This document shows, piece by piece, positions 2,460 to 56,213 of a stretch of DNA of 64,000 bases. Every line of letters begins with the position of its first letter. Positions within the stretch are counted from its first letter, which is position 1. The translations under genes were made by a program, and so were the position numbers. The stretch is from IMG/VR virus record IMGVR_UViG_3300045970_000794, positions 248,001-312,000 of that record; one strand, 5' to 3'. Under the pieces are notes generated by a model. That model searched no databases. It saw nothing but the letters and a program-made list of their open reading frames with translations, and was not told the DNA's origin.

Positions 2460-4244
2460 TTATCTCATACCACTAAATAACCATAAGTAATCACCTTTAG
2501 GGTCTTGCATATTCTTAGATACGATTGGTGTGAACTTAGGTTTATTCATTGGCGTTTTGCTACCTTTTGGAACAAAACCAGTATTATATTCATCAGTAGT
2601 ATTTTTACCACCATTAACAACCCAGCTTTTTAGCATCGCCTTAGCTTGATTCTGGACTTTTTCTAAATTTTTAAATGAATGTTCTAACACCCATAATGCC
2701 ATACCTAATGCCATTAATAAATCATCGTGATGACCTTTCATATGGTCTGGCCTACCGTCACGATAAACAAATGTTTTCATTTCGGATGTTAATCTGATTG
2801 AACGTATTTTAACTAAATTCTGTCGGATGCTTTGTTCCAAATGCCCGATTAATGGTAAACGTATTGAATTTACTACTAAACCTGGTTTCTTATCATCATC
2901 CATCACGTGTTTAGCCAAATCTTTTTGGTCTAATAATTTATTACGTTCACTATAATGGATATTTTTATATTTCACTTCAATCAACTTCAATACTGTTGAC
3001 ACACCCCAACCACCAGTAACGTCAACTACTACATATGCATTATACAATAACCCATACTCTTCAACTATTTTTGCTAATAAATCTGGTGGGACTTTACCAC
3101 GATATTCAGCTACTTCTTCCATTGTCGTAAAATCGATAATAACAAAAGTTGAAAAATCGTCACCACCACCACTGGATACGTCAACACCCATTATGTAACG
3201 ATGACCTTCAATTGGTTTTTCCCAAATCCAAATTTCTTTTTTAATACCAGATAGATATTGTGGTTCTTTGCAATTATTTTTAACGTGGAATTCAATAAAT
3301 TCATCATCAATAACCTGACCCCCAGAACCTAGAAATGATACATCTAATTCTTGAGCAATCATTCGTTTATCACCATTCATACCACGACACATTGCTTCGT
3401 ACCATGAAGAAGTTGGTTTATAACCCGTATCTAATTTACTTTTATAGCTTTCAAATGTGAATTCCATTTCAGTGATTACTTCCTCACCTTTTAACCATTT
3501 TAAATCAATATTATAACGGTTATCTTCATACCACTTCATTTCAACAACATTAAAGTCATTATCACCTTTTAGCGAACCATCATATGATTTCCAATACAAT
3601 TCATCGTAACCATTTGGTGTTGAAATTAATGTTGCTTTACCCCCAGTACCTAGCGATGTTAGTGCGGCTCCGAATACTTCATCACCATTATCAATAAACG
3701 CAGCTTCATCCATAACAAGATATGTAGGAGTAAAACCCCTCAACGCATCTTTAGATGTTGCAACCGCTTTGATTTCACATTTATTTGGTAACATTAATTT
3801 TCTATTGGAATCAACTAAGAATATTGATTTTGCTTCTTTTTCAGCATCACCATAATAATCTTCACCCCAAACCCATCTAGGTAATTGTAATAGAAAATCT
3901 TTAATTTTGGCCAAAAATTCTTCGGCCATATCTCTTTTATTTGCTAATATAAGTATTTTTTCTGGACTTTCATCACTAGCAAAACCAACTTTTATCGCTA
4001 AATAAGCCGCCGTTGTGGTTGAAACCCCAGCTTGTCTTGGTTTTGTTACTAAATTAAAACGATGTAATTCATACGCTTGAATTATTTGTCTTTGTCTTGG
4101 AAATAAATAGAATTGTACGAATCCACCCCTACCTTCATTATATGTTTTATCGAACGTCTTAAAATAAGTTTCGATAGCATACGTTGGATTCATCAAACAT
4201 TTAGCATATTCTTGTAATATTTCACCACTAGTTAAATTATTCAT
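2460..4244 (-). CDS. terL: Terminase large subunit (T4 gp17-like)
   Basis: Walker A KPRQAGVSTT, Walker B LVMDEAAF, coupling motif STPNG, nuclease GVDVS and HDDLLMA. Confidence 0.95.
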   Translation of the reverse strand: MNNLTSGEILQEYAKCLMNPTYAIETYFKTFDKTYNEGRGGFVQFYLFPRQRQIIQAYELHRFNLVTKPRQAGVSTTTAAYLAIKVGFASDESPEKILILANKRDMAEEFLAKIKDFLLQLPRWVWGEDYYGDAEKEAKSIFLVDSNRKLMLPNKCEIKAVATSKDALRGFTPTYLVMDEAAFIDNGDEVFGAALTSLGTGGKATLISTPNGYDELYWKSYDGSLKGDNDFNVVEMKWYEDNRYNIDLKWLKGEEVITEMEFTFESYKSKLDTGYKPTSSWYEAMCRGMNGDKRMIAQELDVSFLGSGGQVIDDEFIEFHVKNNCKEPQYLSGIKKEIWIWEKPIEGHRYIMGVDVSSGGGDDFSTFVIIDFTTMEEVAEYRGKVPPDLLAKIVEEYGLLYNAYVVVDVTGGWGVSTVLKLIEVKYKNIHYSERNKLLDQKDLAKHVMDDDKKPGLVVNSIRLPLIGHLEQSIRQNLVKIRSIRLTSEMKTFVYRDGRPDHMKGHHDDLLMALGMALWVLEHSFKNLEKVQNQAKAMLKSWVVNGGKNTTDEYNTGFVPKGSKTPMNKPKFTPIVSKNMQDPKGDYLWLFSGMR

Positions 4245-6215: not shown

Positions 6216-7463
6216 TTATAATCCGAAATCTGCTAAATCAATTCCATTAATACCATCCGAATCCAAATATTTTGTTTCTTCAAAGGTTTTTCTTCGTTCA
6301 TCAATAGCTTCATTGAATTCATCTTGTTTCATTTCTTTTTTAACTTGAGCAACAATATTGGTAATAATTTCTTTACCACTTGATGTTCCAGCGAAAATTT
6401 CTTTCATACTAGAATTGAACTCATCAACTGGTAATGATGCTAACTCCATATAAACTTGATGTTTAAGATTAAAATCTTCTGGTTCAAACAGTTTAGTAAA
6501 TCGTTCCCATAAAGCTGGTCCTAATCTCATATCCCATGGTTCAGCAGCTAAGAAATCAGCTTTACCTAATACATATTTTTGAATTTTCTCATCTTCTGGT
6601 AAACCATGTGATGATAATAATTCCATAGCACCTTTAGCTAATTCATGAATTAAAACTGGGAATATCAATGCTTGTGCATGAATCTTTGGTTTATCACCAT
6701 CTTTTTTAGGGAATTCAACACGTACAATACCACCTGGTACTCCACCCTCCATTTTATCAATAATGTAATACATATAATCAGCGGCCGCCATTGTTTTAGA
6801 ATATAAATTAGGGAGCCTAGGATTCATTTCAGATAATTCATTATCAACCATATGAAACATGTGGTGATTTTTCTTAGCGGCACCTTGAGTCATAGCATTT
6901 AATAATCTTCTTTTATAAACTTCAGCATTAGCGTTTTCTAAATCTTTATGACTCTTAAATTCCATACCTTCAACTGGTATTGGTTTAGGATTAAGTTTAG
7001 TACCTTCTAATGATATATTATCAACTAATTCAACTGTAATTTCAACATCTTCATCTGGTATATCAAACTCTTCACGAATCATTTTAATTGCTAATTCTTC
7101 AAGTTCTTTTCTATTAGCTTTTTCACTTACCATACAATCTTTAACCAATGGTAATTGAGCCGCTAATATCATTTCTGGTGTGATATTATCAGAATCAAAA
7201 TATTTTTTAGCATTTTTAACCACATCTTTGAATCTTTCACCAATAATTTTTTCTTCAAAATGTTGTTCATCACCTTCTGGAAATGCTGGGTGTTCACCCA
7301 ATGAGTGATTTCTACGTCTAAGCGCAATTTCTAATTCTGAAGCCATTCTTTCACTATGTTTATCATCATAAGTGATTCTAGATTCATTTAAATTATTATG
7401 ATTATTCTTAACATCGGTTAAGATTTTATCAATCATTTTTGAATATTTGTCTTGTTCTGGCAT
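6216..7463 (-). CDS. Hypothetical protein, probably virion/head cluster
   Basis: 415 aa ORF co-oriented with portal and TerL; no catalytic motif recognised. Confidence 0.7.
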   Translation of the reverse strand: MPEQDKYSKMIDKILTDVKNNHNNLNESRITYDDKHSERMASELEIALRRRNHSLGEHPAFPEGDEQHFEEKIIGERFKDVVKNAKKYFDSDNITPEMILAAQLPLVKDCMVSEKANRKELEELAIKMIREEFDIPDEDVEITVELVDNISLEGTKLNPKPIPVEGMEFKSHKDLENANAEVYKRRLLNAMTQGAAKKNHHMFHMVDNELSEMNPRLPNLYSKTMAAADYMYYIIDKMEGGVPGGIVRVEFPKKDGDKPKIHAQALIFPVLIHELAKGAMELLSSHGLPEDEKIQKYVLGKADFLAAEPWDMRLGPALWERFTKLFEPEDFNLKHQVYMELASLPVDEFNSSMKEIFAGTSSGKEIITNIVAQVKKEMKQDEFNEAIDERRKTFEETKYLDSDGINGIDLADFGL

Positions 7464-43988: not shown

Positions 43989-44028
43989 TTTTTTGGTATG
44001 ATACACAATTTAAAAGATACACAATTTA

Positions 44029-44042
44029 TACACAAATGTGTA
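44029..44042. promoter_or_regulatory. TACAC-N4-GTGTA palindrome 1
   Basis: TACACAAATGTGTA, preceded by two ATACACAATTT half-sites. Confidence 0.6.
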
Positions 44043-44099
44043 CTTTCTGAAAAATATTAGTATTTATTAGTAAATAATATATTATTAATATTTTAATTT

Positions 44100-44738
44100 A
44101 TGCCATATAAAGATAAAGATAAAGAAAAACAATACCAAAAGGAATACAGAGAAAAGAATAAAGAATATTTCGAAGAATATCGAAAAATACATAAATATAA
44201 AAATAATAAATCGTATCAGGAATATAGTGAAAATAATAAAGAATCGTCCAAAAAATATTATAAAACTAAGGATAAAATTGTATTACAAAAAAAAGAATAT
44301 TATGAAAATAATAAAGAAAAATTAAAGCAATCTCAAAAGGAATGGCGAGAAAATAATAAAGATTATACGAATAAAATTGCTCGTAATAAATATAAAACAG
44401 ACCCATTATTTAAACTTAAACGAAGTATAAGGCGTATAATTGCTTTCAGTCTTAAAAATAAAGGACTCAAAAAAACCAGTAGAGCACACCTTATTTTAGG
44501 CTGTTCTTTTAATGATTTTAAAACTCATATTGAATCGAAATTTGAATATTGGATGACTTGGGATAACTATGGTTTATATAACGGTACGTTAAATTATGGA
44601 TGGGATATTGACCACATTATACCATTAGCAACGGCAATAAATGAAGATGAAGTGATTAGATTAAATCATTATACTAATTTGCGACCATTATGTAGTCATA
44701 TTAATCGGGTAATAAAACGTAATAAAATTGTGTATTAG
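44100..44738 (+). CDS. HNH homing-endonuclease-like protein (paralog of 4761-5363)
   Basis: GLYNGT.NYGWDIDHII.LATA..E.....LNHYTNL.PLCS.IN shared with 4761. Confidence 0.75.
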   Translation: MPYKDKDKEKQYQKEYREKNKEYFEEYRKIHKYKNNKSYQEYSENNKESSKKYYKTKDKIVLQKKEYYENNKEKLKQSQKEWRENNKDYTNKIARNKYKTDPLFKLKRSIRRIIAFSLKNKGLKKTSRAHLILGCSFNDFKTHIESKFEYWMTWDNYGLYNGTLNYGWDIDHIIPLATAINEDEVIRLNHYTNLRPLCSHINRVIKRNKIVY

Positions 44739-52183: not shown

Positions 52184-52519
52184 ATCAGTTTTTTCCACGG
52201 GCTTCTTTATGCTATTCAACTCAATTCTTTTTGGTTCAATTGTTACCTTTACATATTCACCAATAATTAATGTATTCTGGTTTTTAACATATGCATTAAC
52301 ACCATTACGAATATATTTTTCGGCACTATCCAATTGAACTACATTGGTACAACTGTCCACAACCTTTTTAATCCGTAAGGAATAACGCTTGAGGAATTCA
52401 TCCAATTCAATTTTATACTTCGCTTGTCTGACCTCAGAATCAAAACTATTAAATGTATCGCTAATTGTTTTAATTACACTATCAAACGTATCATTCGCTT
52501 TATTAAGAAGACTTTCCAT
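52160..52519 (-). CDS. Hypothetical protein
   Basis: 119 aa; follows P19. Confidence 0.65.
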   Translation of the reverse strand: MESLLNKANDTFDSVIKTISDTFNSFDSEVRQAKYKIELDEFLKRYSLRIKKVVDSCTNVVQLDSAEKYIRNGVNAYVKNQNTLIIGEYVKVTIEPKRIELNSIKKPVEKTDNILNKIW

Positions 52520-52531
52520 AGTGTAAAAAAG

Positions 52532-52601
52532 GTTAATTGGTTAATATGATGCAAAGATAAAACAAATAAATGACAATTCCAAATATTATTTGATATATTT
52601 T
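52532..52601 (-). promoter_or_regulatory. Module P19
   Basis: -7 box 52559-52552. Confidence 0.85.
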
Positions 52602-52714
52602 TTATAATGTGAAAATTATTAAATTTCCCTAGGGGACAAAACTCTTACATCCCTTGATAACCCATTATATACATTTTATCTATATCCTTCTGAAAGCCCA
52701 TATGAAAATAAATT

Positions 52715-52765
52715 GAAAATAATTCACTTTTTATTTGGTAGTTTAATTTATTTTTTGTACCTTTG
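52715..52765 (+). promoter_or_regulatory. Module P20 (class B)
   Basis: -7 box TACCTTTG 52758-52765. Confidence 0.8.
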
Positions 52766-52918
52766 TTCTGTCATTATAAGACATGTTGGTACCACCACAG
52801 TACCAAGAGGTATACTCCAACCTACACCATATTTTTTTTACCATATATTTAGATATATACATAACCTACATACGTATCAATAACAAAAAGGGAATGAGTA
52901 TTACACCCACCCCCTTAA
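52766..52918 (+). ncRNA. Candidate small RNA, copy A
   Basis: TGTCATTA..AGAC.TG and AGGTATACTCCAAC shared with 54922-54976; TTGGTAC-N7-GTACCAA hairpin. Confidence 0.4.
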
Positions 52919-52940
52919 AGAAAATAATATTAACTAAAAA

Positions 52941-53921
52941 CTATCTTAATACATAATCATTTTGACCTGTAACTTCTAATGCAAAATTAAATGATTGCAT
53001 ATTAGTTCTATAATTAGTACCAACACTTAAACTTTCAAGTTGACCATTCTCACGTTTTGGGTGTGATTTAGCATGATTAGTCCAACTAGTTACCCCATTG
53101 TGTAATCCAAAAATTGTATTACCTTTTTGGTTCATTTCTTTTTTAATGTGGGAATATAATGTGTCCATTGCATTTAAAGTTTTACCACTATCAACACCAA
53201 CCTTAGCAGTCAATCTATCAACACCTAATAATTCTCTTACTAAACCATCAACTAAATTTTGTGTACAGGCTGTTGAGTGGAATTTATTATAAATCTCAAT
53301 TTGTTTCATACTTTCGTTTAATGCTAAACGAATTAAACTTGGTAACTCAACCATTTTACCCTCTAACGACGCACTATGTTTTAACTTCATTTCACCCCTT
53401 TTATAAAAACGAAAAAATTGATTTGAACAGCTCATTACCATATCTGAAATTCCTACACCTAATCCAGTGCTACCATCATTAGAATCAATAATGGTAATGT
53501 ACTTTTTAATGCTATCATTACCAACTTTTGAAAATCCATCAATAGCTAACTGAATAAACGTTTTACGCCCACCATTCAAACAACCAGCTTTGCTTACATT
53601 TAACTCACCAAAACCATTCATACCACGTAACACCAATTCAACAACATCATCATTTTGGCTCACATGATAACTAGCTTTGGTAGTGTTAATGATTTCCATA
53701 CTTTGAGTATTTAATAACCCAAAATATGTGGTGCGAATTGATTTCTGTTTTTTAGCTTTACCAAATAAGCCAACCATTGGAACTTTCTCAATACGAAAAT
53801 TTAAACCATTGTCAACCAAGATTTTTTTCACTTGATTTTTAAGTGCTCTTTCTTGCTTTTTAGCATTATTAGTTTTTTGTGCCATAGCTTCTTTTTCAAA
53901 ATTTACGATTTCTGTTTTCAT
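52941..53921 (-). CDS. DUF932-family protein
   Basis: AGCLNGGRKTFIQL, DSNDGS..G..MVMSCSNQF, KHSAS; ATG 53921. Confidence 0.75.
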   Translation of the reverse strand: MKTEIVNFEKEAMAQKTNNAKKQERALKNQVKKILVDNGLNFRIEKVPMVGLFGKAKKQKSIRTTYFGLLNTQSMEIINTTKASYHVSQNDDVVELVLRGMNGFGELNVSKAGCLNGGRKTFIQLAIDGFSKVGNDSIKKYITIIDSNDGSTGLGVGISDMVMSCSNQFFRFYKRGEMKLKHSASLEGKMVELPSLIRLALNESMKQIEIYNKFHSTACTQNLVDGLVRELLGVDRLTAKVGVDSGKTLNAMDTLYSHIKKEMNQKGNTIFGLHNGVTSWTNHAKSHPKRENGQLESLSVGTNYRTNMQSFNFALEVTGQNDYVLR

Positions 53922-53930
53922 GATATATAG

Positions 53931-54000
53931 TTTTAATTGATTAATATAATGCAAAGGTAAGTAAAATATTTTAATCTACCAAATATTATTTAATATATTT
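53931..54000 (-). promoter_or_regulatory. Module P21
   Basis: -7 box 53959-53952. Confidence 0.85.
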
Positions 54001-54013
54001 TCAAATTATTTTA

Positions 54014-54676
54014 CTAATGTTGTACGAAACACACGTTATTCTTAGTTATACAGTAAGTACACTCCAAACCACATTTAATGTTTTTACTACTTGTAACAGG
54101 GCAAATAAATGATTTATGATTTGCTTTTAACTCATTGCAATACTCAATACTACCAAAATTCAATTTACCATTGATGAAACTACTTATTAAATTGAAATTG
54201 CTATTAGTCTTAATAACACTAAAATCTAATAAACTTTCTACCTTGGTATATACATAAAATTTAATATGTGGAAATAAACCAATAATATCATTCCAAAAAT
54301 CAATATATGATTGACTGAAAAAGTCACCACTAGAATGAATCCTTACCACAGTCCTTTTTGTTTCACTTAATTGTGTTACAATTAATTCCTTTAATAAACT
54401 TGGATTGTTTAAAAACAATTCATGATTAACAGTACGATACAATTCAGTATCTACATATTGAACCTCAGCCTTTTTTGCATAGCAACTTGCTTTGCAGTCC
54501 ACACAATTTAAACAAGTTTTTACACTTGGTAAATCAAAGATAAGAATATTATGTAACTTGCTATTACCATTAACTAATCTATTCTTATTAATATAGATGT
54601 AATTAAATAGTAATTCACGAGTATTGGTTTGTTTGCTGTAATCTCTGAATGTCCTAGATAAATCAAAATTGTTCAT
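54014..54676 (-). CDS. GP88-like (phage Gene 88) Cys-cluster protein
   Basis: FDLPSVKTC..C..C..CYAKK, VRIHSSGDF, FYVYTK, C..C..C; ATG 54676. Confidence 0.6.
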   Translation of the reverse strand: MNNFDLSRTFRDYSKQTNTRELLFNYIYINKNRLVNGNSKLHNILIFDLPSVKTCLNCVDCKASCYAKKAEVQYVDTELYRTVNHELFLNNPSLLKELIVTQLSETKRTVVRIHSSGDFFSQSYIDFWNDIIGLFPHIKFYVYTKVESLLDFSVIKTNSNFNLISSFINGKLNFGSIEYCNELKANHKSFICPVTSSKNIKCGLECTYCITKNNVCFVQH

Positions 54677-54689
54677 AGTGTTTCGGTTT

Positions 54690-54759
54690 AAGTGATTAAT
54701 AACATATTGCAAAACTACAAAAAATATTTCATATAAACAAATATTATTTAATATATTTT
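54690..54759 (-). promoter_or_regulatory. Module P22
   Basis: -7 box TAGTTTTG 54717-54710. Confidence 0.75.
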
Positions 54760-54870
54760 TCATATACTATATAAGATATTAATTGTTGGCTCAAACCCTC
54801 TGAAACCCCTATGGCAACTCAAAAACATTCTTATTCCGTGAATAAGAATGATAGCAAATTAAAATATTTT

Positions 54871-54921
54871 GAAAATAATTCACTTTTTATTTGGTAGATT
54901 AAATTATTTTCACTACCTTTG
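54871..54921 (+). promoter_or_regulatory. Module P23 (class B)
   Basis: -7 box TACCTTTG 54914-54921. Confidence 0.8.
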
Positions 54922-55020
54922 TATTGTCATTAAGACGTGACGATACCCACAACGGTCTCGGAAGGTATACTCCAACATGCAATGTTGTCGGTGGAACACT
55001 CCAATATGCCCGCTATTTTC
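54922..55020 (+). ncRNA. Candidate small RNA, copy B (3' end uncertain)
   Basis: Shares motifs with copy A; CAACAT-GCA-ATGTTG hairpin. Confidence 0.4.
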
Positions 55021-55278
55021 CTATGGGGAAATATTTGGAATTGTAAATTATTATTTGTAAGTTTGCATATGATTTAAATGGGACTGCGGTCCCACTGAAT
55101 TTGCTCGCTCATTAAATAAATGGGTTAGCCTTGCCATTCCTATTACTGAATATATCAGCGATACGGATTCCTATACCCATTTTTTTGCGAATTTGGGCAT
55201 CGGCATAGCTATTTCCAAAAATTTCTGGCGAAAAATATTAACAAAAATTTTTGCACAAGTCCGATTCCTATTAGAATA

Positions 55279-55314
55279 TACTATGGAATCTACTGTGGAA
55301 TATACTATGGAATA
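55279..55314. repeat. 12-bp tandem repeat x3
   Basis: TACTATGGAATC TACTGTGGAATA TACTATGGAATA. Confidence 0.85.
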
Positions 55315-55425
55315 TATTGTAAATTCCCTATAGGTGTAGGTAATTTTCTTAGGGGCTATAAAGGTGATTTTATATCATTTTTATGGGGAGTTATAGCTAT
55401 GGGAAAAATAAAACGATGAAGCATA

Positions 55426-55439
55426 TACACAATTGTGTA
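55426..55439. promoter_or_regulatory. TACAC-N4-GTGTA palindrome 3
   Basis: TACACAATTGTGTA. Confidence 0.6.
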
Positions 55440-55626
55440 CTTATGCTGGCATAGAGGCTCTTAGGAATCTCCATTTTTTACCACATTTTCCCACAAAGCC
55501 CCATACTTACCCCCATATAGTAAGGGGAACGTGGTTTAGAATGTATAGGGGCATATCTTATTATATTAGGCTATATAAAGCTCTGTAATGGATTAAAAAG
55601 TATATGGTGGGGCAGAAGTATAAAGA

Positions 55627-55640
55627 TACACATTTGTGTA
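55627..55640. promoter_or_regulatory. TACAC-N4-GTGTA palindrome 4
   Basis: TACACATTTGTGTA. Confidence 0.6.
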
Positions 55641-55650
55641 TTAGAGGGGC

Positions 55651-55932
55651 TTAAAATGAGTTAGTATTATCTAGTTCATTTTGTATAAATTGTATGGCTT
55701 CCATGGGTGACAATTTATTAATATCTCTATATAGCAGTTCATGAGATTGTCTAAGGAGGTGTTTTTGTATAGTTGATTCATCGAATGATTTGGATATAGA
55801 TTTAATGGACTCCAAGTACCTTACCCAATTAGAGTTGTTATTATAGTAGCCTAAATTTTCAGAGAATGTTTTAGCTATTCTATCATACTCGATATATTTG
55901 AATAGATTATATTGTTTATCTTCAAGTGCCAT
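55651..55932 (-). CDS. Hypothetical protein
   Basis: 93 aa, bracketed by palindromes 4 and 5. Confidence 0.6.
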   Translation of the reverse strand: MALEDKQYNLFKYIEYDRIAKTFSENLGYYNNNSNWVRYLESIKSISKSFDESTIQKHLLRQSHELLYRDINKLSPMEAIQFIQNELDNTNSF

Positions 55933-55953
55933 AATAATTTTTTATTGAATAAG

Positions 55954-55967
55954 TACACATTTGTGTA
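55954..55967. promoter_or_regulatory. TACAC-N4-GTGTA palindrome 5
   Basis: GTACACATTTGTGTAC, 21 nt upstream of ATG 55932. Confidence 0.6.
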
Positions 55968-56213
55968 CCATGGGATGGGTATTATTCGGTAATATATATA
56001 CCATCAAATTCTTCATCACAAATACAATCATAGTCTTTAATAAATCTTTTTGATTGTGCTATTATTTTATGACCATTGACGACCATTGAAAATTCTATGT
56101 AGTAATACATTTTTCTTCTCTAAGAACTTTAATTTCGAAAAATTCTTGGGTTTTTCTTTGACCTTCTTCTGAGTCAAGGAACTTTTTTAATTCATCTATA
56201 TAGCTCATAATAT

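What the first reader, a model, noticed from the sequence alone, without database searches (positions are those of the whole stretch)
54980..55650. Roughly 670-bp non-coding region with iteron-like repeats
Seen: the largest ORF-free stretch in the window, with 3 x 12-bp TACT(A/G)TGGAAT(A/C), recurring ATTCCTAT and CTATGG words, strand-biased GGGG runs, a C-rich patch (55478-55515) and two TACAC palindromes, downstream of promoter P23. Inference: a replication origin (transcription-primed, as in T4 R-loop origins) or a packaging/terminal-repeat junction.
Basis: partly seen in the sequence, partly recalled or inferred. Interest (0 to 1): 0.6.

Follow-up and report, generated by a model that had tools for sequence, protein, structure and literature searches.

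The report
Phage copy of host MraZ operator
The long gene-free stretch is a conserved control region of a large Bacteroidota phage holding small-RNA genes and a look-alike of the DNA site where the host's cell-division regulator MraZ binds, a feature I found no report of in phages; a replication origin is neither shown nor excluded.

Summary
The gap is even larger than reported: 54677-55650 (about 970 bp), non-coding under codes 11, 4 and TAG=Q. The 12-bp repeats, the ATTCCTAT and CTATGG words, the G runs, the C-rich patch and the palindromes are all present and far above chance.

The window is part of a 362-kb phage genome from pond metagenomes, with Bacteroidota-type promoters. The gap is one copy of a non-coding module found in at least 21 related phage contigs, next to a GP88-like gene. 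It contains:
- two strong promoters on the + strand, the first driving a new three-hairpin small RNA;
- a short tandem-repeat array whose sequence differs between relatives;
- the C-rich patch.

Read on the minus strand, the patch is a row of GTGG/ATGG boxes exactly 10 bp apart. Relatives have 3-4 canonical GTG(G/T) boxes. The same 24-mer lies about 44 nt upstream of mraZ in 116 of 120 bacterial genomes, nearly all Bacteroidota. That matches the published MraZ operator. The phages encode no MraZ.

Best reading: a host-MraZ binding array on phage DNA, acting as decoy, roadblock or architectural site. I found no positive evidence for an origin: there is no skew switch and no replication or terminase gene nearby. 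Coverage could not be tested. A packaging site is unlikely.

The parts
52771..52845 (+). sRNA-B: second copy of the small-RNA family, behind its own strong promoter (motif ends 52765). It lies antisense to the neighbouring genes and ends in a T run.
   Evidence: (nhmmer E 1.6e-13).
54014..54676 (-). GP88-like gene (PF17338). Start revised from 54763 to 54676. It is the constant neighbour of the module in relatives.
   Evidence: Pfam E 6e-22. Alignment with 9 homologues starts at this Met. The homologous gene lies 670-1100 bp from the box array in 10 loci.
54710..54742 (-). Bacteroidota-type promoter (TTTG, 17-23 nt, TAnnTTTG) of the GP88-like gene.
   Evidence: The same position holds a promoter in relatives.
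54826..54850 (-). Terminator-like hairpin (11 bp) followed by T5 on the minus strand. It would stop minus-strand transcripts that cross the gap.
54890..54921 (+).
54926..55040 (+). sRNA-A: three-hairpin small RNA with an invariant AGGUAUACUCC. Here its 3' module is duplicated.
   Evidence: (P2 helix with compensatory changes). Transcription is inferred, not observed.
55034..55065 (+). Second strong promoter, P2.
   Evidence: (repeat D2).
55070..55192 (+). Inferred second non-coding transcript. It starts with a GGGAC-UGCG-GUCCC hairpin and ends in a long-range stem followed by T7. It holds two of the ATTCCTAT words.
   Evidence: The boundaries are inferred.
55218..55256 (+). Degenerate copy of a block conserved in relatives (AAATTTTGGCTGAAAAAT ... 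TTTTTACAG). Function unknown.
55274..55320 (.).
   Evidence: Arrays of 10-13 bp with different sequence lie at the same relative position in L127, L274, L317 and L311.
55426..55439 (.). Palindrome TACACAATTGTGTA, the inner flank of the box array.
   Evidence: Relatives carry TGTACAC-N4-GTGTACA on one or both sides of the array.
55471..55516 (-). The C-rich patch, read here as an MraZ-box array. On the minus strand: ATGG, GTGG, GTGG, ATGG at 10-bp steps (boxes at 55504-55501, 55494-55491, 55484-55481, 55474-55471), plus a fifth ATGG 12 nt upstream.
   Evidence: the only such 4-box array in the genome, expected 0.0; homologous arrays with 3-4 canonical boxes; host operator; literature.
55528..55533 (.). 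AACGTG (CACGTT on the minus strand), part of a block conserved beside the array in relatives.
   Evidence: Its presence in the retrieved relatives was required by the search pattern.
55627..55640 (.). Palindrome TACACATTTGTGTA, the outer flank of the array, next to the 3' end of the 93-aa ORF.
55651..55932 (-). 93-aa ORF of unknown function, flanked by palindromes 2 and 3 (third copy at 55954-55967).

Best explanation
The gap is a conserved non-coding control region in the early-gene part of a large phage of Bacteroidota. From the GP88-like gene's own promoter, two strong host-type promoters face the other way. They make small non-coding RNAs; the first is a new three-hairpin family.

Further along lie a short tandem-repeat array that differs from phage to phage, and then the C-rich patch, bracketed by a phage-wide palindrome. 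Read on the minus strand, the patch is a row of GTGG/ATGG boxes spaced exactly one helical turn apart. That is the architecture, and in relatives the exact sequence, of the operator that MraZ binds upstream of its own gene in Bacteroidota. [quoted passage not shown]

Proposed mechanism: ring-shaped host MraZ oligomers bind cooperatively to the phased boxes on phage DNA.

Shown:
- the match to the host operator in sequence and spacing;
- conservation of the array in phages;
- its single-copy, intergenic position;
- the absence of a phage mraZ.

Inferred:
- that MraZ actually binds;
- what binding achieves. My preferred reading is that many replicating phage genomes soak up the scarce, self-regulated MraZ (a decoy). 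Equally possible, the bound complex blocks or organises the strong early transcription that runs into it.
For: Host operator:
- In 8 bacterial metagenome loci the same 10-bp phased CCAC repeats lie 11-48 nt from the start of an mraZ gene that is followed by rsmH. Pfam and NCBIfam confirmed both genes in the two loci scanned; the other six were assigned by blastp clustering.
- The 24-mer GTGGTAAAAAGTGGTAAAAAGTGG occurs in at least 120 species genomes, nearly all Bacteroidota. In 116 of 120 it is on the same strand as mraZ, at a median of 44 nt upstream.
- The literature describes MraZ boxes as GTG(G/T) with 6-nt spacers, three or four per operator (PMC12957436; bioRxiv 10.1101/2022.02.09.479790).

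Phage arrays:
- 17 of 21 phage elements have three or more canonical boxes in exact phase, although the search pattern required only two.
- The array is unique in G000, G001 and G002, with 0.0 expected.
- The window's array is homologous by position: it lies between the CACGTT block and a palindrome, and it has 4 boxes in phase.
- 49 further IMG/VR loci (39 distinct arrays) hold arrays of 3-5 boxes. Of the 39 distinct arrays, 36 are intergenic, and none of the 49 loci has mraZ nearby.
- No MraZ or AbrB/MazE-type gene is present in the complete genome or in five related records. No mraZ remnant lies beside the arrays.

Context:
- The promoters are of Bacteroidota type.
- The module's order is conserved: promoter(s), sRNA, blocks, array, palindrome, next to GP88.
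- A freshwater metagenome (X3) holds pieces 93-97% identical to 55326-55476 and 55545-55692, while the flanking genes are barely covered.
Against: - No experiment shows MraZ binding to these boxes in any Bacteroidota, let alone on phage DNA.
- The window's own array is degenerate: two canonical GTGG boxes plus ATGG variants. Two canonical boxes alone would be expected about once per genome by chance.
- Relatives were retrieved with patterns taken from the array, so part of the similarity is ascertainment.
- Phage arrays are not followed by the -7 promoter box that follows the host operator. They also lie hundreds of bases from the next gene, so the host's mode of action, promoter occlusion, does not carry over directly.
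- No RNA data exist for any of the inferred transcripts.
- The 12-bp repeats, the ATTCCTAT words, the palindromes and the TAKGGGG words are not explained by MraZ.
Confidence: 0.5

Rival explanations
1. Replication origin. The tandem repeats are iterons for a phage-specific initiator, the MraZ-type boxes serve as host-factor sites (as DnaA or IHF sites do in plasmid and phage origins), and the strong promoters activate or prime initiation.
For: The module is single-copy and conserved. Tandem repeats of about one helical turn, differing in sequence, lie 60-196 bp from the array in 5 of 21 elements. One to three strong promoters fire toward it. The spacers are AT-rich and T tracts are phased. Other phage arrays sit in long intergenic regions far from gene starts.
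Against: There is no GC-skew inflection at the locus; the skew simply follows gene orientation. The DnaB-like helicase and the polymerase lie at 139 kb and 191 kb, against 303 kb for the locus. The constant neighbour is a Cys-rich uncharacterised protein, not a recognisable initiator. 16 of 21 elements lack the tandem repeats. MraZ has no known role in replication. Coverage could not be examined because the runs are held as contigs only.
Confidence: 0.2
2. The region downstream of the two promoters is one long structured non-coding RNA or processed precursor, and the conserved blocks, palindromes and C-rich repeats are RNA elements rather than protein-binding DNA.
For: Strong promoters point into the region. 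Two palindromes keep their symmetry through paired changes: GTTCCACGTGGAAC versus GCTCCACGTGGAGC, and TGTACAC versus TGTACAG variants. The small RNA next door is clearly structured.
Against: The fold of the first 275 nt is not better than shuffles (z -1.84). The box array is conserved as sequence in strict 10-bp phase and is identical to a DNA operator of the host. Paired changes in a palindrome fit a dimeric DNA-binding protein equally well. There is no Rfam match in the window or in 20 relatives.
Confidence: 0.1
3. The array is a functionless remnant of captured host DNA, and the repeats are slippage products in a recombination hot spot for free-standing endonuclease genes.
For: Endonuclease VII/HNH-like ORFs sit in or beside the module in G002, L199 and L294, and the same palindrome precedes such a gene at window 44100. 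The window's array is partly degenerate.
Against: No mraZ or promoter remnant accompanies the arrays. Boxes stay in phase in about 60 distinct phage arrays while the spacers vary. 36 of 39 distinct arrays are intergenic.
Confidence: 0.1
4. Packaging (pac) site or terminal-repeat junction.
For: Only the presence of repeats and palindromes in a non-coding stretch.
Against: The large terminase gene is 51 kb away. The assembly closes with a 127-bp overlap inside an ORF, which points to a circularly permuted or circular assembly. No contig ends pile up at the locus (table 6).
Confidence: 0.03

Closest known systems
MraZ-binding repeats (operator of the Pmra promoter of the dcw cluster)
   Same: GTG(G/T) boxes with 6-nt spacers, 3-5 in a row. 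Relatives carry the very 14- to 24-mer that precedes mraZ in Bacteroidota.
   Different: The phage array is not next to mraZ or any dcw gene. It is not followed by the host's -7 promoter box, and it lies hundreds of bases from the nearest gene in a phage genome that has no mraZ. The window's own copy has only two canonical boxes.
Iteron-type origins of phages and plasmids (lambda ori, P1 oriR, pSC101)
   Same: Short direct repeats at about helical spacing, host-factor sites beside them, AT-rich DNA, single copy, transcription running toward the site.
   Different: The repeats are only 12 bp in 3.6 copies and are absent from most relatives. No initiator gene is adjacent and there is no skew signal. 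The host-factor sites are of MraZ type, not DnaA or IHF type. This comparison rests on general knowledge of those origins.
T4 oriF/oriG and T7 primary origin (promoter plus unwinding element, R-loop priming)
   Same: Strong early promoters directly upstream of an AT-rich non-coding stretch.
   Different: Here the promoters are followed by discrete small-RNA genes with terminator-like ends. Nothing shows a persistent RNA-DNA hybrid.
datA-type titration locus of E. coli (a cluster of DnaA boxes that soaks up a regulator)
   Same: A cluster of binding sites for a host regulator placed away from the regulated promoter. This is the functional analogy for the decoy reading.
   Different: A different protein and a chromosomal rather than viral context. 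The analogy comes from general knowledge and was not tested.

Membership tests
MraZ-binding repeat array | Boxes of sequence GTG(G/T) | tested here: inconclusive
   The window has 2 canonical GTGG boxes plus ATGG variants. 17 of 21 homologous elements have 3-4 canonical boxes.
MraZ-binding repeat array | Six-nucleotide spacers (10-bp period), three or more boxes in a row | tested here: met
   Four boxes at 55471, 55481, 55491 and 55501. This is the only such array in the 362-kb genome, against 0.0 expected.
MraZ-binding repeat array | Lies in the promoter region of mraZ or the dcw cluster | tested here: not met
   No mraZ is present in the phage genome or in relatives, and there is no remnant beside the arrays. 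The host arrays do lie about 44 nt upstream of mraZ.
MraZ-binding repeat array | Bound by MraZ | not testable with these tools
   Needs EMSA or ChIP.
Iteron-type replication origin | Array of direct repeats bound by a cognate initiator encoded nearby | tested here: inconclusive
   Repeats are present. No recognisable initiator is adjacent.
Iteron-type replication origin | Strand-composition switch or coverage peak at the site | tested here: not met
   There is no GC-skew inflection. Coverage is not testable because the runs are contigs only.
Iteron-type replication origin | DnaA boxes | tested here: not met
   By eye, no TTATCCACA within one mismatch in the gap; the CCAC boxes differ from it at two or more positions (reading).
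pac site / terminal junction | Adjacent to terminase genes; DNA ends map there | tested here: not met
   TerL lies at window 3483-4046. No pile-up of ends is seen, though only contigs were available.
Any Rfam RNA family (for the small RNA and the rest of the gap) | Match to a covariance model | tested here: not met
   No hit at gathering score in the window or in 20 related loci. No hit at E up to 5 in 52500-56000, apart from one chance miRNA match.

The most novel reading that the evidence does not exclude
Many phages of Bacteroidota, including this one, carry free-standing copies of the host MraZ operator in long non-coding regions. They use the host's cell-division master regulator as a factor on phage DNA. 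Either the arrays titrate MraZ to reprogramme division and cell-wall genes during infection, or MraZ serves as the architectural or origin-binding protein of a new type of phage origin whose specificity comes from the neighbouring variable iterons. Together with a new small-RNA family that always accompanies the module, this would be an undescribed host-takeover locus.
Probability: 0.3. Interest if true: 0.85.

Novelty: new variant of a known kind. Interest (0 to 1): 0.68.

Why it matters
MraZ is one of the most conserved bacterial regulators, yet its biological role remains poorly understood. Finding its operator copied into about 60 distinct phage arrays, without the gene, would be the first sign that phages target this node. 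It gives a directly testable handle: does MraZ bind, and does the array change division-gene expression or phage yield? The arrays also carry the phylum-specific operator sequence, so they could help assign uncultured phages to hosts. The accompanying three-hairpin small RNA is a new phage RNA family with clear covariation and no known function.

Tried and rejected
- Other genetic codes (TAG=Q, code 4) open no ORF in the gap. I name no other code for this genome.
- tRNA and Rfam scans were blank.
- DNA search of cultured phages was blank for the window and for a relative's element. The GP88-like protein finds only distant mycobacteriophage and Streptomyces-phage proteins.
- A 14-mer from the small RNA and a 16-base pattern from the array were too unspecific; two viral scans were largely wasted.
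- Small RNA as a mimic of a host CRISPR repeat or host sRNA: its 20-mer core occurs in no species genome. A remembered likeness to Cas13b repeats was not pursued further.
- Small-RNA tail pairing with the block beside the array: duplex energies are no better than shuffles.
- Palindrome as the Bacteroidetes LexA box: the published motifs are GGA-N5-TCC and CTAA-N5-TTAG, which do not match.
- Boxes as DnaA boxes: two or more mismatches each. Single perfect DnaA boxes seen in two bacterial loci and in G002 are not a shared feature.
- A G-rich partner pairing with the C-rich patch as a long-range RNA stem: convincing only in L202, where it is better read as an inverted pair of boxes.
- Phage-encoded MraZ or AbrB/MazE: none. 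mraZ remnant beside the arrays: none.
- GP88-like and the 93-aa ORF against solved structures: nothing.
- A protein-based search for related loci with the GP88-like protein found nothing in viral contigs.

Full report
**Setting.** The window is bases 248001-312000 of a 362,102-bp virus record with 30% G+C. Its 127-bp end overlap lies inside an ORF, so it reflects a circular or permuted assembly, not real termini. The DNA occurs in pond and freshwater metagenomes. The genome carries 40 tRNA genes at 24-77 kb. It also has about 14 near-identical strong promoters of the Bacteroidota type (TTTG, about 20 nt, TAnnTTTG), concentrated at 280-320 kb among many small genes. The finding lies in this early-looking region. 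Nearly all genes there are on the minus strand.

**The observation.**
- The 12-mers lie at 55279, 55291 and 55303. TRF gives period 12, 3.6 copies, score 72-80.
- ATTCCTAT occurs 3 times against 0.01 expected, and CTATGG 4 times against 0.09.
- GGGG occurs 7 times on the + strand against 3 CCCC, and the CCCC runs are confined to 55499-55514.
- The TACACA-WW-TGTGTA palindrome lies at 55426 and 55627, with a third copy at 55954.

The gap is larger than stated. The flanking GP88-like gene starts at 54676, not 54763. This follows from its own promoter (54710-54742, minus strand) and from the alignment with nine homologues. So 54677-55650 is non-coding. No ORF opens under TAG=Q or code 4. There is no tRNA and no Rfam family.

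**Small-RNA genes.** Two of the strong promoters face against the surrounding genes, ending at window 52765 and 54921. Each is followed by about 75 nt of homologous non-coding sequence ending in the invariant AGGUAUACUCC.
- Nineteen distinct copies were collected from this genome and related contigs. In most of them the MFE fold shows the same three hairpins, and the first two hairpins differ in sequence between copies.
- RNAalifold found compensatory changes in 4 of 6 pairs.
- Only two copies exist in this genome. Relatives have up to about eight.
- The core 20-mer is absent from 185,579 species genomes and from Rfam.

A second strong promoter (55034-55065) follows. It would give a transcript of about 120 nt ending in a stem plus T7. 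On the minus strand, an 11-bp hairpin with T5 at 54850-54826 looks like a terminator. No RNA run holds this DNA, so all transcripts are inferred.

**The module in relatives.** Pattern searches seeded from the C-rich patch recovered the same arrangement in IMG/VR contigs (G001, G002, L199, L202) and in about 16 metagenome contigs. Read in the direction of the window's + strand, the order is constant:
1. the GP88-like gene, pointing away, with its promoter;
2. one to three strong promoters pointing inward, the first usually driving the small RNA;
3. conserved blocks;
4. the C-rich repeats;
5. a block containing AACGTG;
6. a palindrome of the TGTACAC-N4-GTGTACA type, often with a second copy on the other side.

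These points rest. The GP88-like gene lies 670-1100 bp from the repeats in 10 loci, and a DUF932 gene lies behind it in 5. Each genome examined has exactly one such module. In the freshwater run X3, short contigs 93-97% identical to 55326-55476 and 55545-55692 were found, while the flanking genes were hardly covered.

**What the C-rich patch is.** The same metagenome scan also returned bacterial contigs. In eight of them, the phased CCAC repeats lie 11-48 nt from the start of a gene on the other strand. In the two loci scanned that gene is mraZ (TIGR00242, E about 1e-42), followed by rsmH. The other six were assigned by blastp clustering with those two.

Read on the gene strand, the repeats are GTGG boxes every 10 bp.
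Nearly all are Bacteroidota, for example Pedobacter, Flavobacteriaceae, Polaribacter, Tenacibaculum, Saprospiraceae, Chitinophagales and Bacteroidales.
- In 116 of 120 it lies on the same strand as mraZ, at a median of 44 nt upstream.
[quoted passage not shown] In Bacillus subtilis it is three GTGG(A/T)G motifs with 4-nt spacers that are needed for repression (bioRxiv 10.1101/2022.02.09.479790).

In the phage elements, 17 of 21 have at least three canonical boxes in exact phase, although the search pattern fixed only two.

The window's own array is weaker. On the minus strand it reads ATGG, GTGG, GTGG, ATGG at 55504, 55494, 55484 and 55474, with a fifth ATGG 12 nt upstream. It is still the only four-box array of this relaxed kind in the genome, against 0.0 expected.

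Neither this complete genome, nor a complete 288-kb relative, nor four partial ones encode MraZ. The window's own genome also encodes no AbrB/MazE-type protein. No mraZ remnant lies beside the arrays.

A further viral scan found 49 more IMG/VR loci with arrays of 3-5 boxes (39 distinct arrays).
- None of the 49 loci is near mraZ, and only three are near a GP88-like gene.
- Of the 39 distinct arrays, 36 are intergenic.
- The next same-strand gene starts 129-2253 nt away (39 nt for one of the three arrays that lie inside an ORF).
- None is followed by the -7 promoter box.

These points rest. Full-text searches found no paper linking MraZ boxes with phages, within the limits of that library.

**Mechanism.**
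- Shown: the sequence and spacing match the host operator, the array is conserved, and its position is single-copy and intergenic.
- Inferred: that host MraZ binds.
- Not established: what binding does.

The arrays lack the host's promoter context and sit far from genes, so simple promoter occlusion is unlikely. I prefer a decoy that titrates a scarce, self-regulated repressor as phage genomes multiply. The alternative is a bound complex that blocks or organises the strong early transcription converging on it. I put 0.5 on the array being a functional MraZ site.

**The origin idea.** The 12-bp repeats are not explained by MraZ. Arrays of 10-13 bp with 3-4.6 copies and unrelated sequence lie on the same side, 60-196 bp from the boxes, in 5 of 21 elements. 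That is how iterons for a fast-evolving specific protein would behave. It is also how slippage-prone DNA would behave.

Against an origin:
- the cumulative GC skew shows no change at the locus;
- the helicase and polymerase genes are far away;
- there is no initiator-like neighbour.

Coverage could not be tested, because all four runs are held as contigs. I leave the origin at 0.2. A packaging site is unlikely, since the terminase is 51 kb away.

**The palindrome.** It is conserved as sequence, sometimes with symmetric paired changes. It is not the Bacteroidetes LexA box and has no T run behind it. It also precedes an endonuclease VII/HNH-like gene at window 44100. Homologues of that gene sit inside or beside the module in G002, L199 and L294. 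So it may be a signal tied to these mobile genes. That could also explain the patchy high identity seen in X3. This is speculation.

**Limits.**
- Relatives were found with patterns taken from the element, which biases what was retrieved.
- No expression data, read-end data or coverage data were available.
- MraZ binding has not been tested in Bacteroidota.
- Read laying was given 5,501 letters.

Noticed in passing
window 52771-52845 and 54926-55040 (+); further copies in L127, L276, L274, L311, L293, L312 and others: A new small-RNA family of about 75 nt. It has three hairpins, an invariant AGGUAUACUCC and a tail CCUACC-UAUAUU, and always sits directly behind a strong Bacteroidota-type promoter. 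There is no Rfam match, and the core is absent from bacterial species genomes. The two copies in this genome flank the DUF932 and GP88-like genes in antisense orientation.
   Followed up: partly
G000 71732-71807 (outside the window): ARAGORN calls a tRNA with anticodon CUA (labelled Pyl), a possible amber suppressor, within a cluster of 40 tRNA genes at 24-77 kb. I did not test whether any genes use in-frame TAG.
   Followed up: no
window 44000-44738: Two direct copies of GATACACAATTTA plus the palindrome TACACAAATGTGTAC sit just upstream of a 212-aa lysine-rich ORF. That ORF is 52% identical to ORFs flanking the module in L199 and weakly matches PHROG endonuclease VII/HNH families. The palindrome seems tied to these free-standing endonuclease genes.
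   Followed up: partly
G000 156486-156590 (outside the window): An AT-rich intergenic tandem array, period 12 (TATTATAGTAAT), about 8 copies. It is a stronger iteron-like array than the one in the finding.
   Followed up: no
window 52601-53919: In runs X1 and X2, a second contig joins 52601 to 53919 with 622 other letters in between. This is a variant in which the DUF932 gene region is replaced.
   Followed up: no
window 52940 / 55473: In run X4, a low-depth contig (depth 2) joins 52940 to 55473 with 27 other letters between. The right-hand breakpoint is exactly at the edge of the box array. It may be a relative's rearrangement or a repeat artefact.
   Followed up: no
IMG/VR loci L449-L497: 49 further viral loci (39 distinct arrays), many from contigs of 100-380 kb, carry 3-5 phased GTGG boxes in long intergenic regions without mraZ. 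In one group the array is followed directly by GTGTACAC, a half-site of the palindrome.
   Followed up: partly
window 54014-54763: The mechanical ORF overstates the GP88-like gene by 29 codons. The true start is 54676, behind a canonical promoter at 54710-54742. The protein family shares a conserved Cys cluster and the motifs R-L-N-G-T-S-D and F-Y-D-Y-T-K, which suggests an enzyme.
   Followed up: partly
window 55021-55650 (+): Seven words of the form TA(T/A/G)GGGG(A/C) occur on the + strand. Similar ATAGGGG words lie beside the palindrome in L126 and L128. They remain unexplained.
   Followed up: no
L128 about 6470-6580 (G002): In a relative, the same strong promoter type drives a tRNA-like gene with its own terminator, directly followed by the palindrome. 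This supports the view that these promoters serve small-RNA genes.
   Followed up: no
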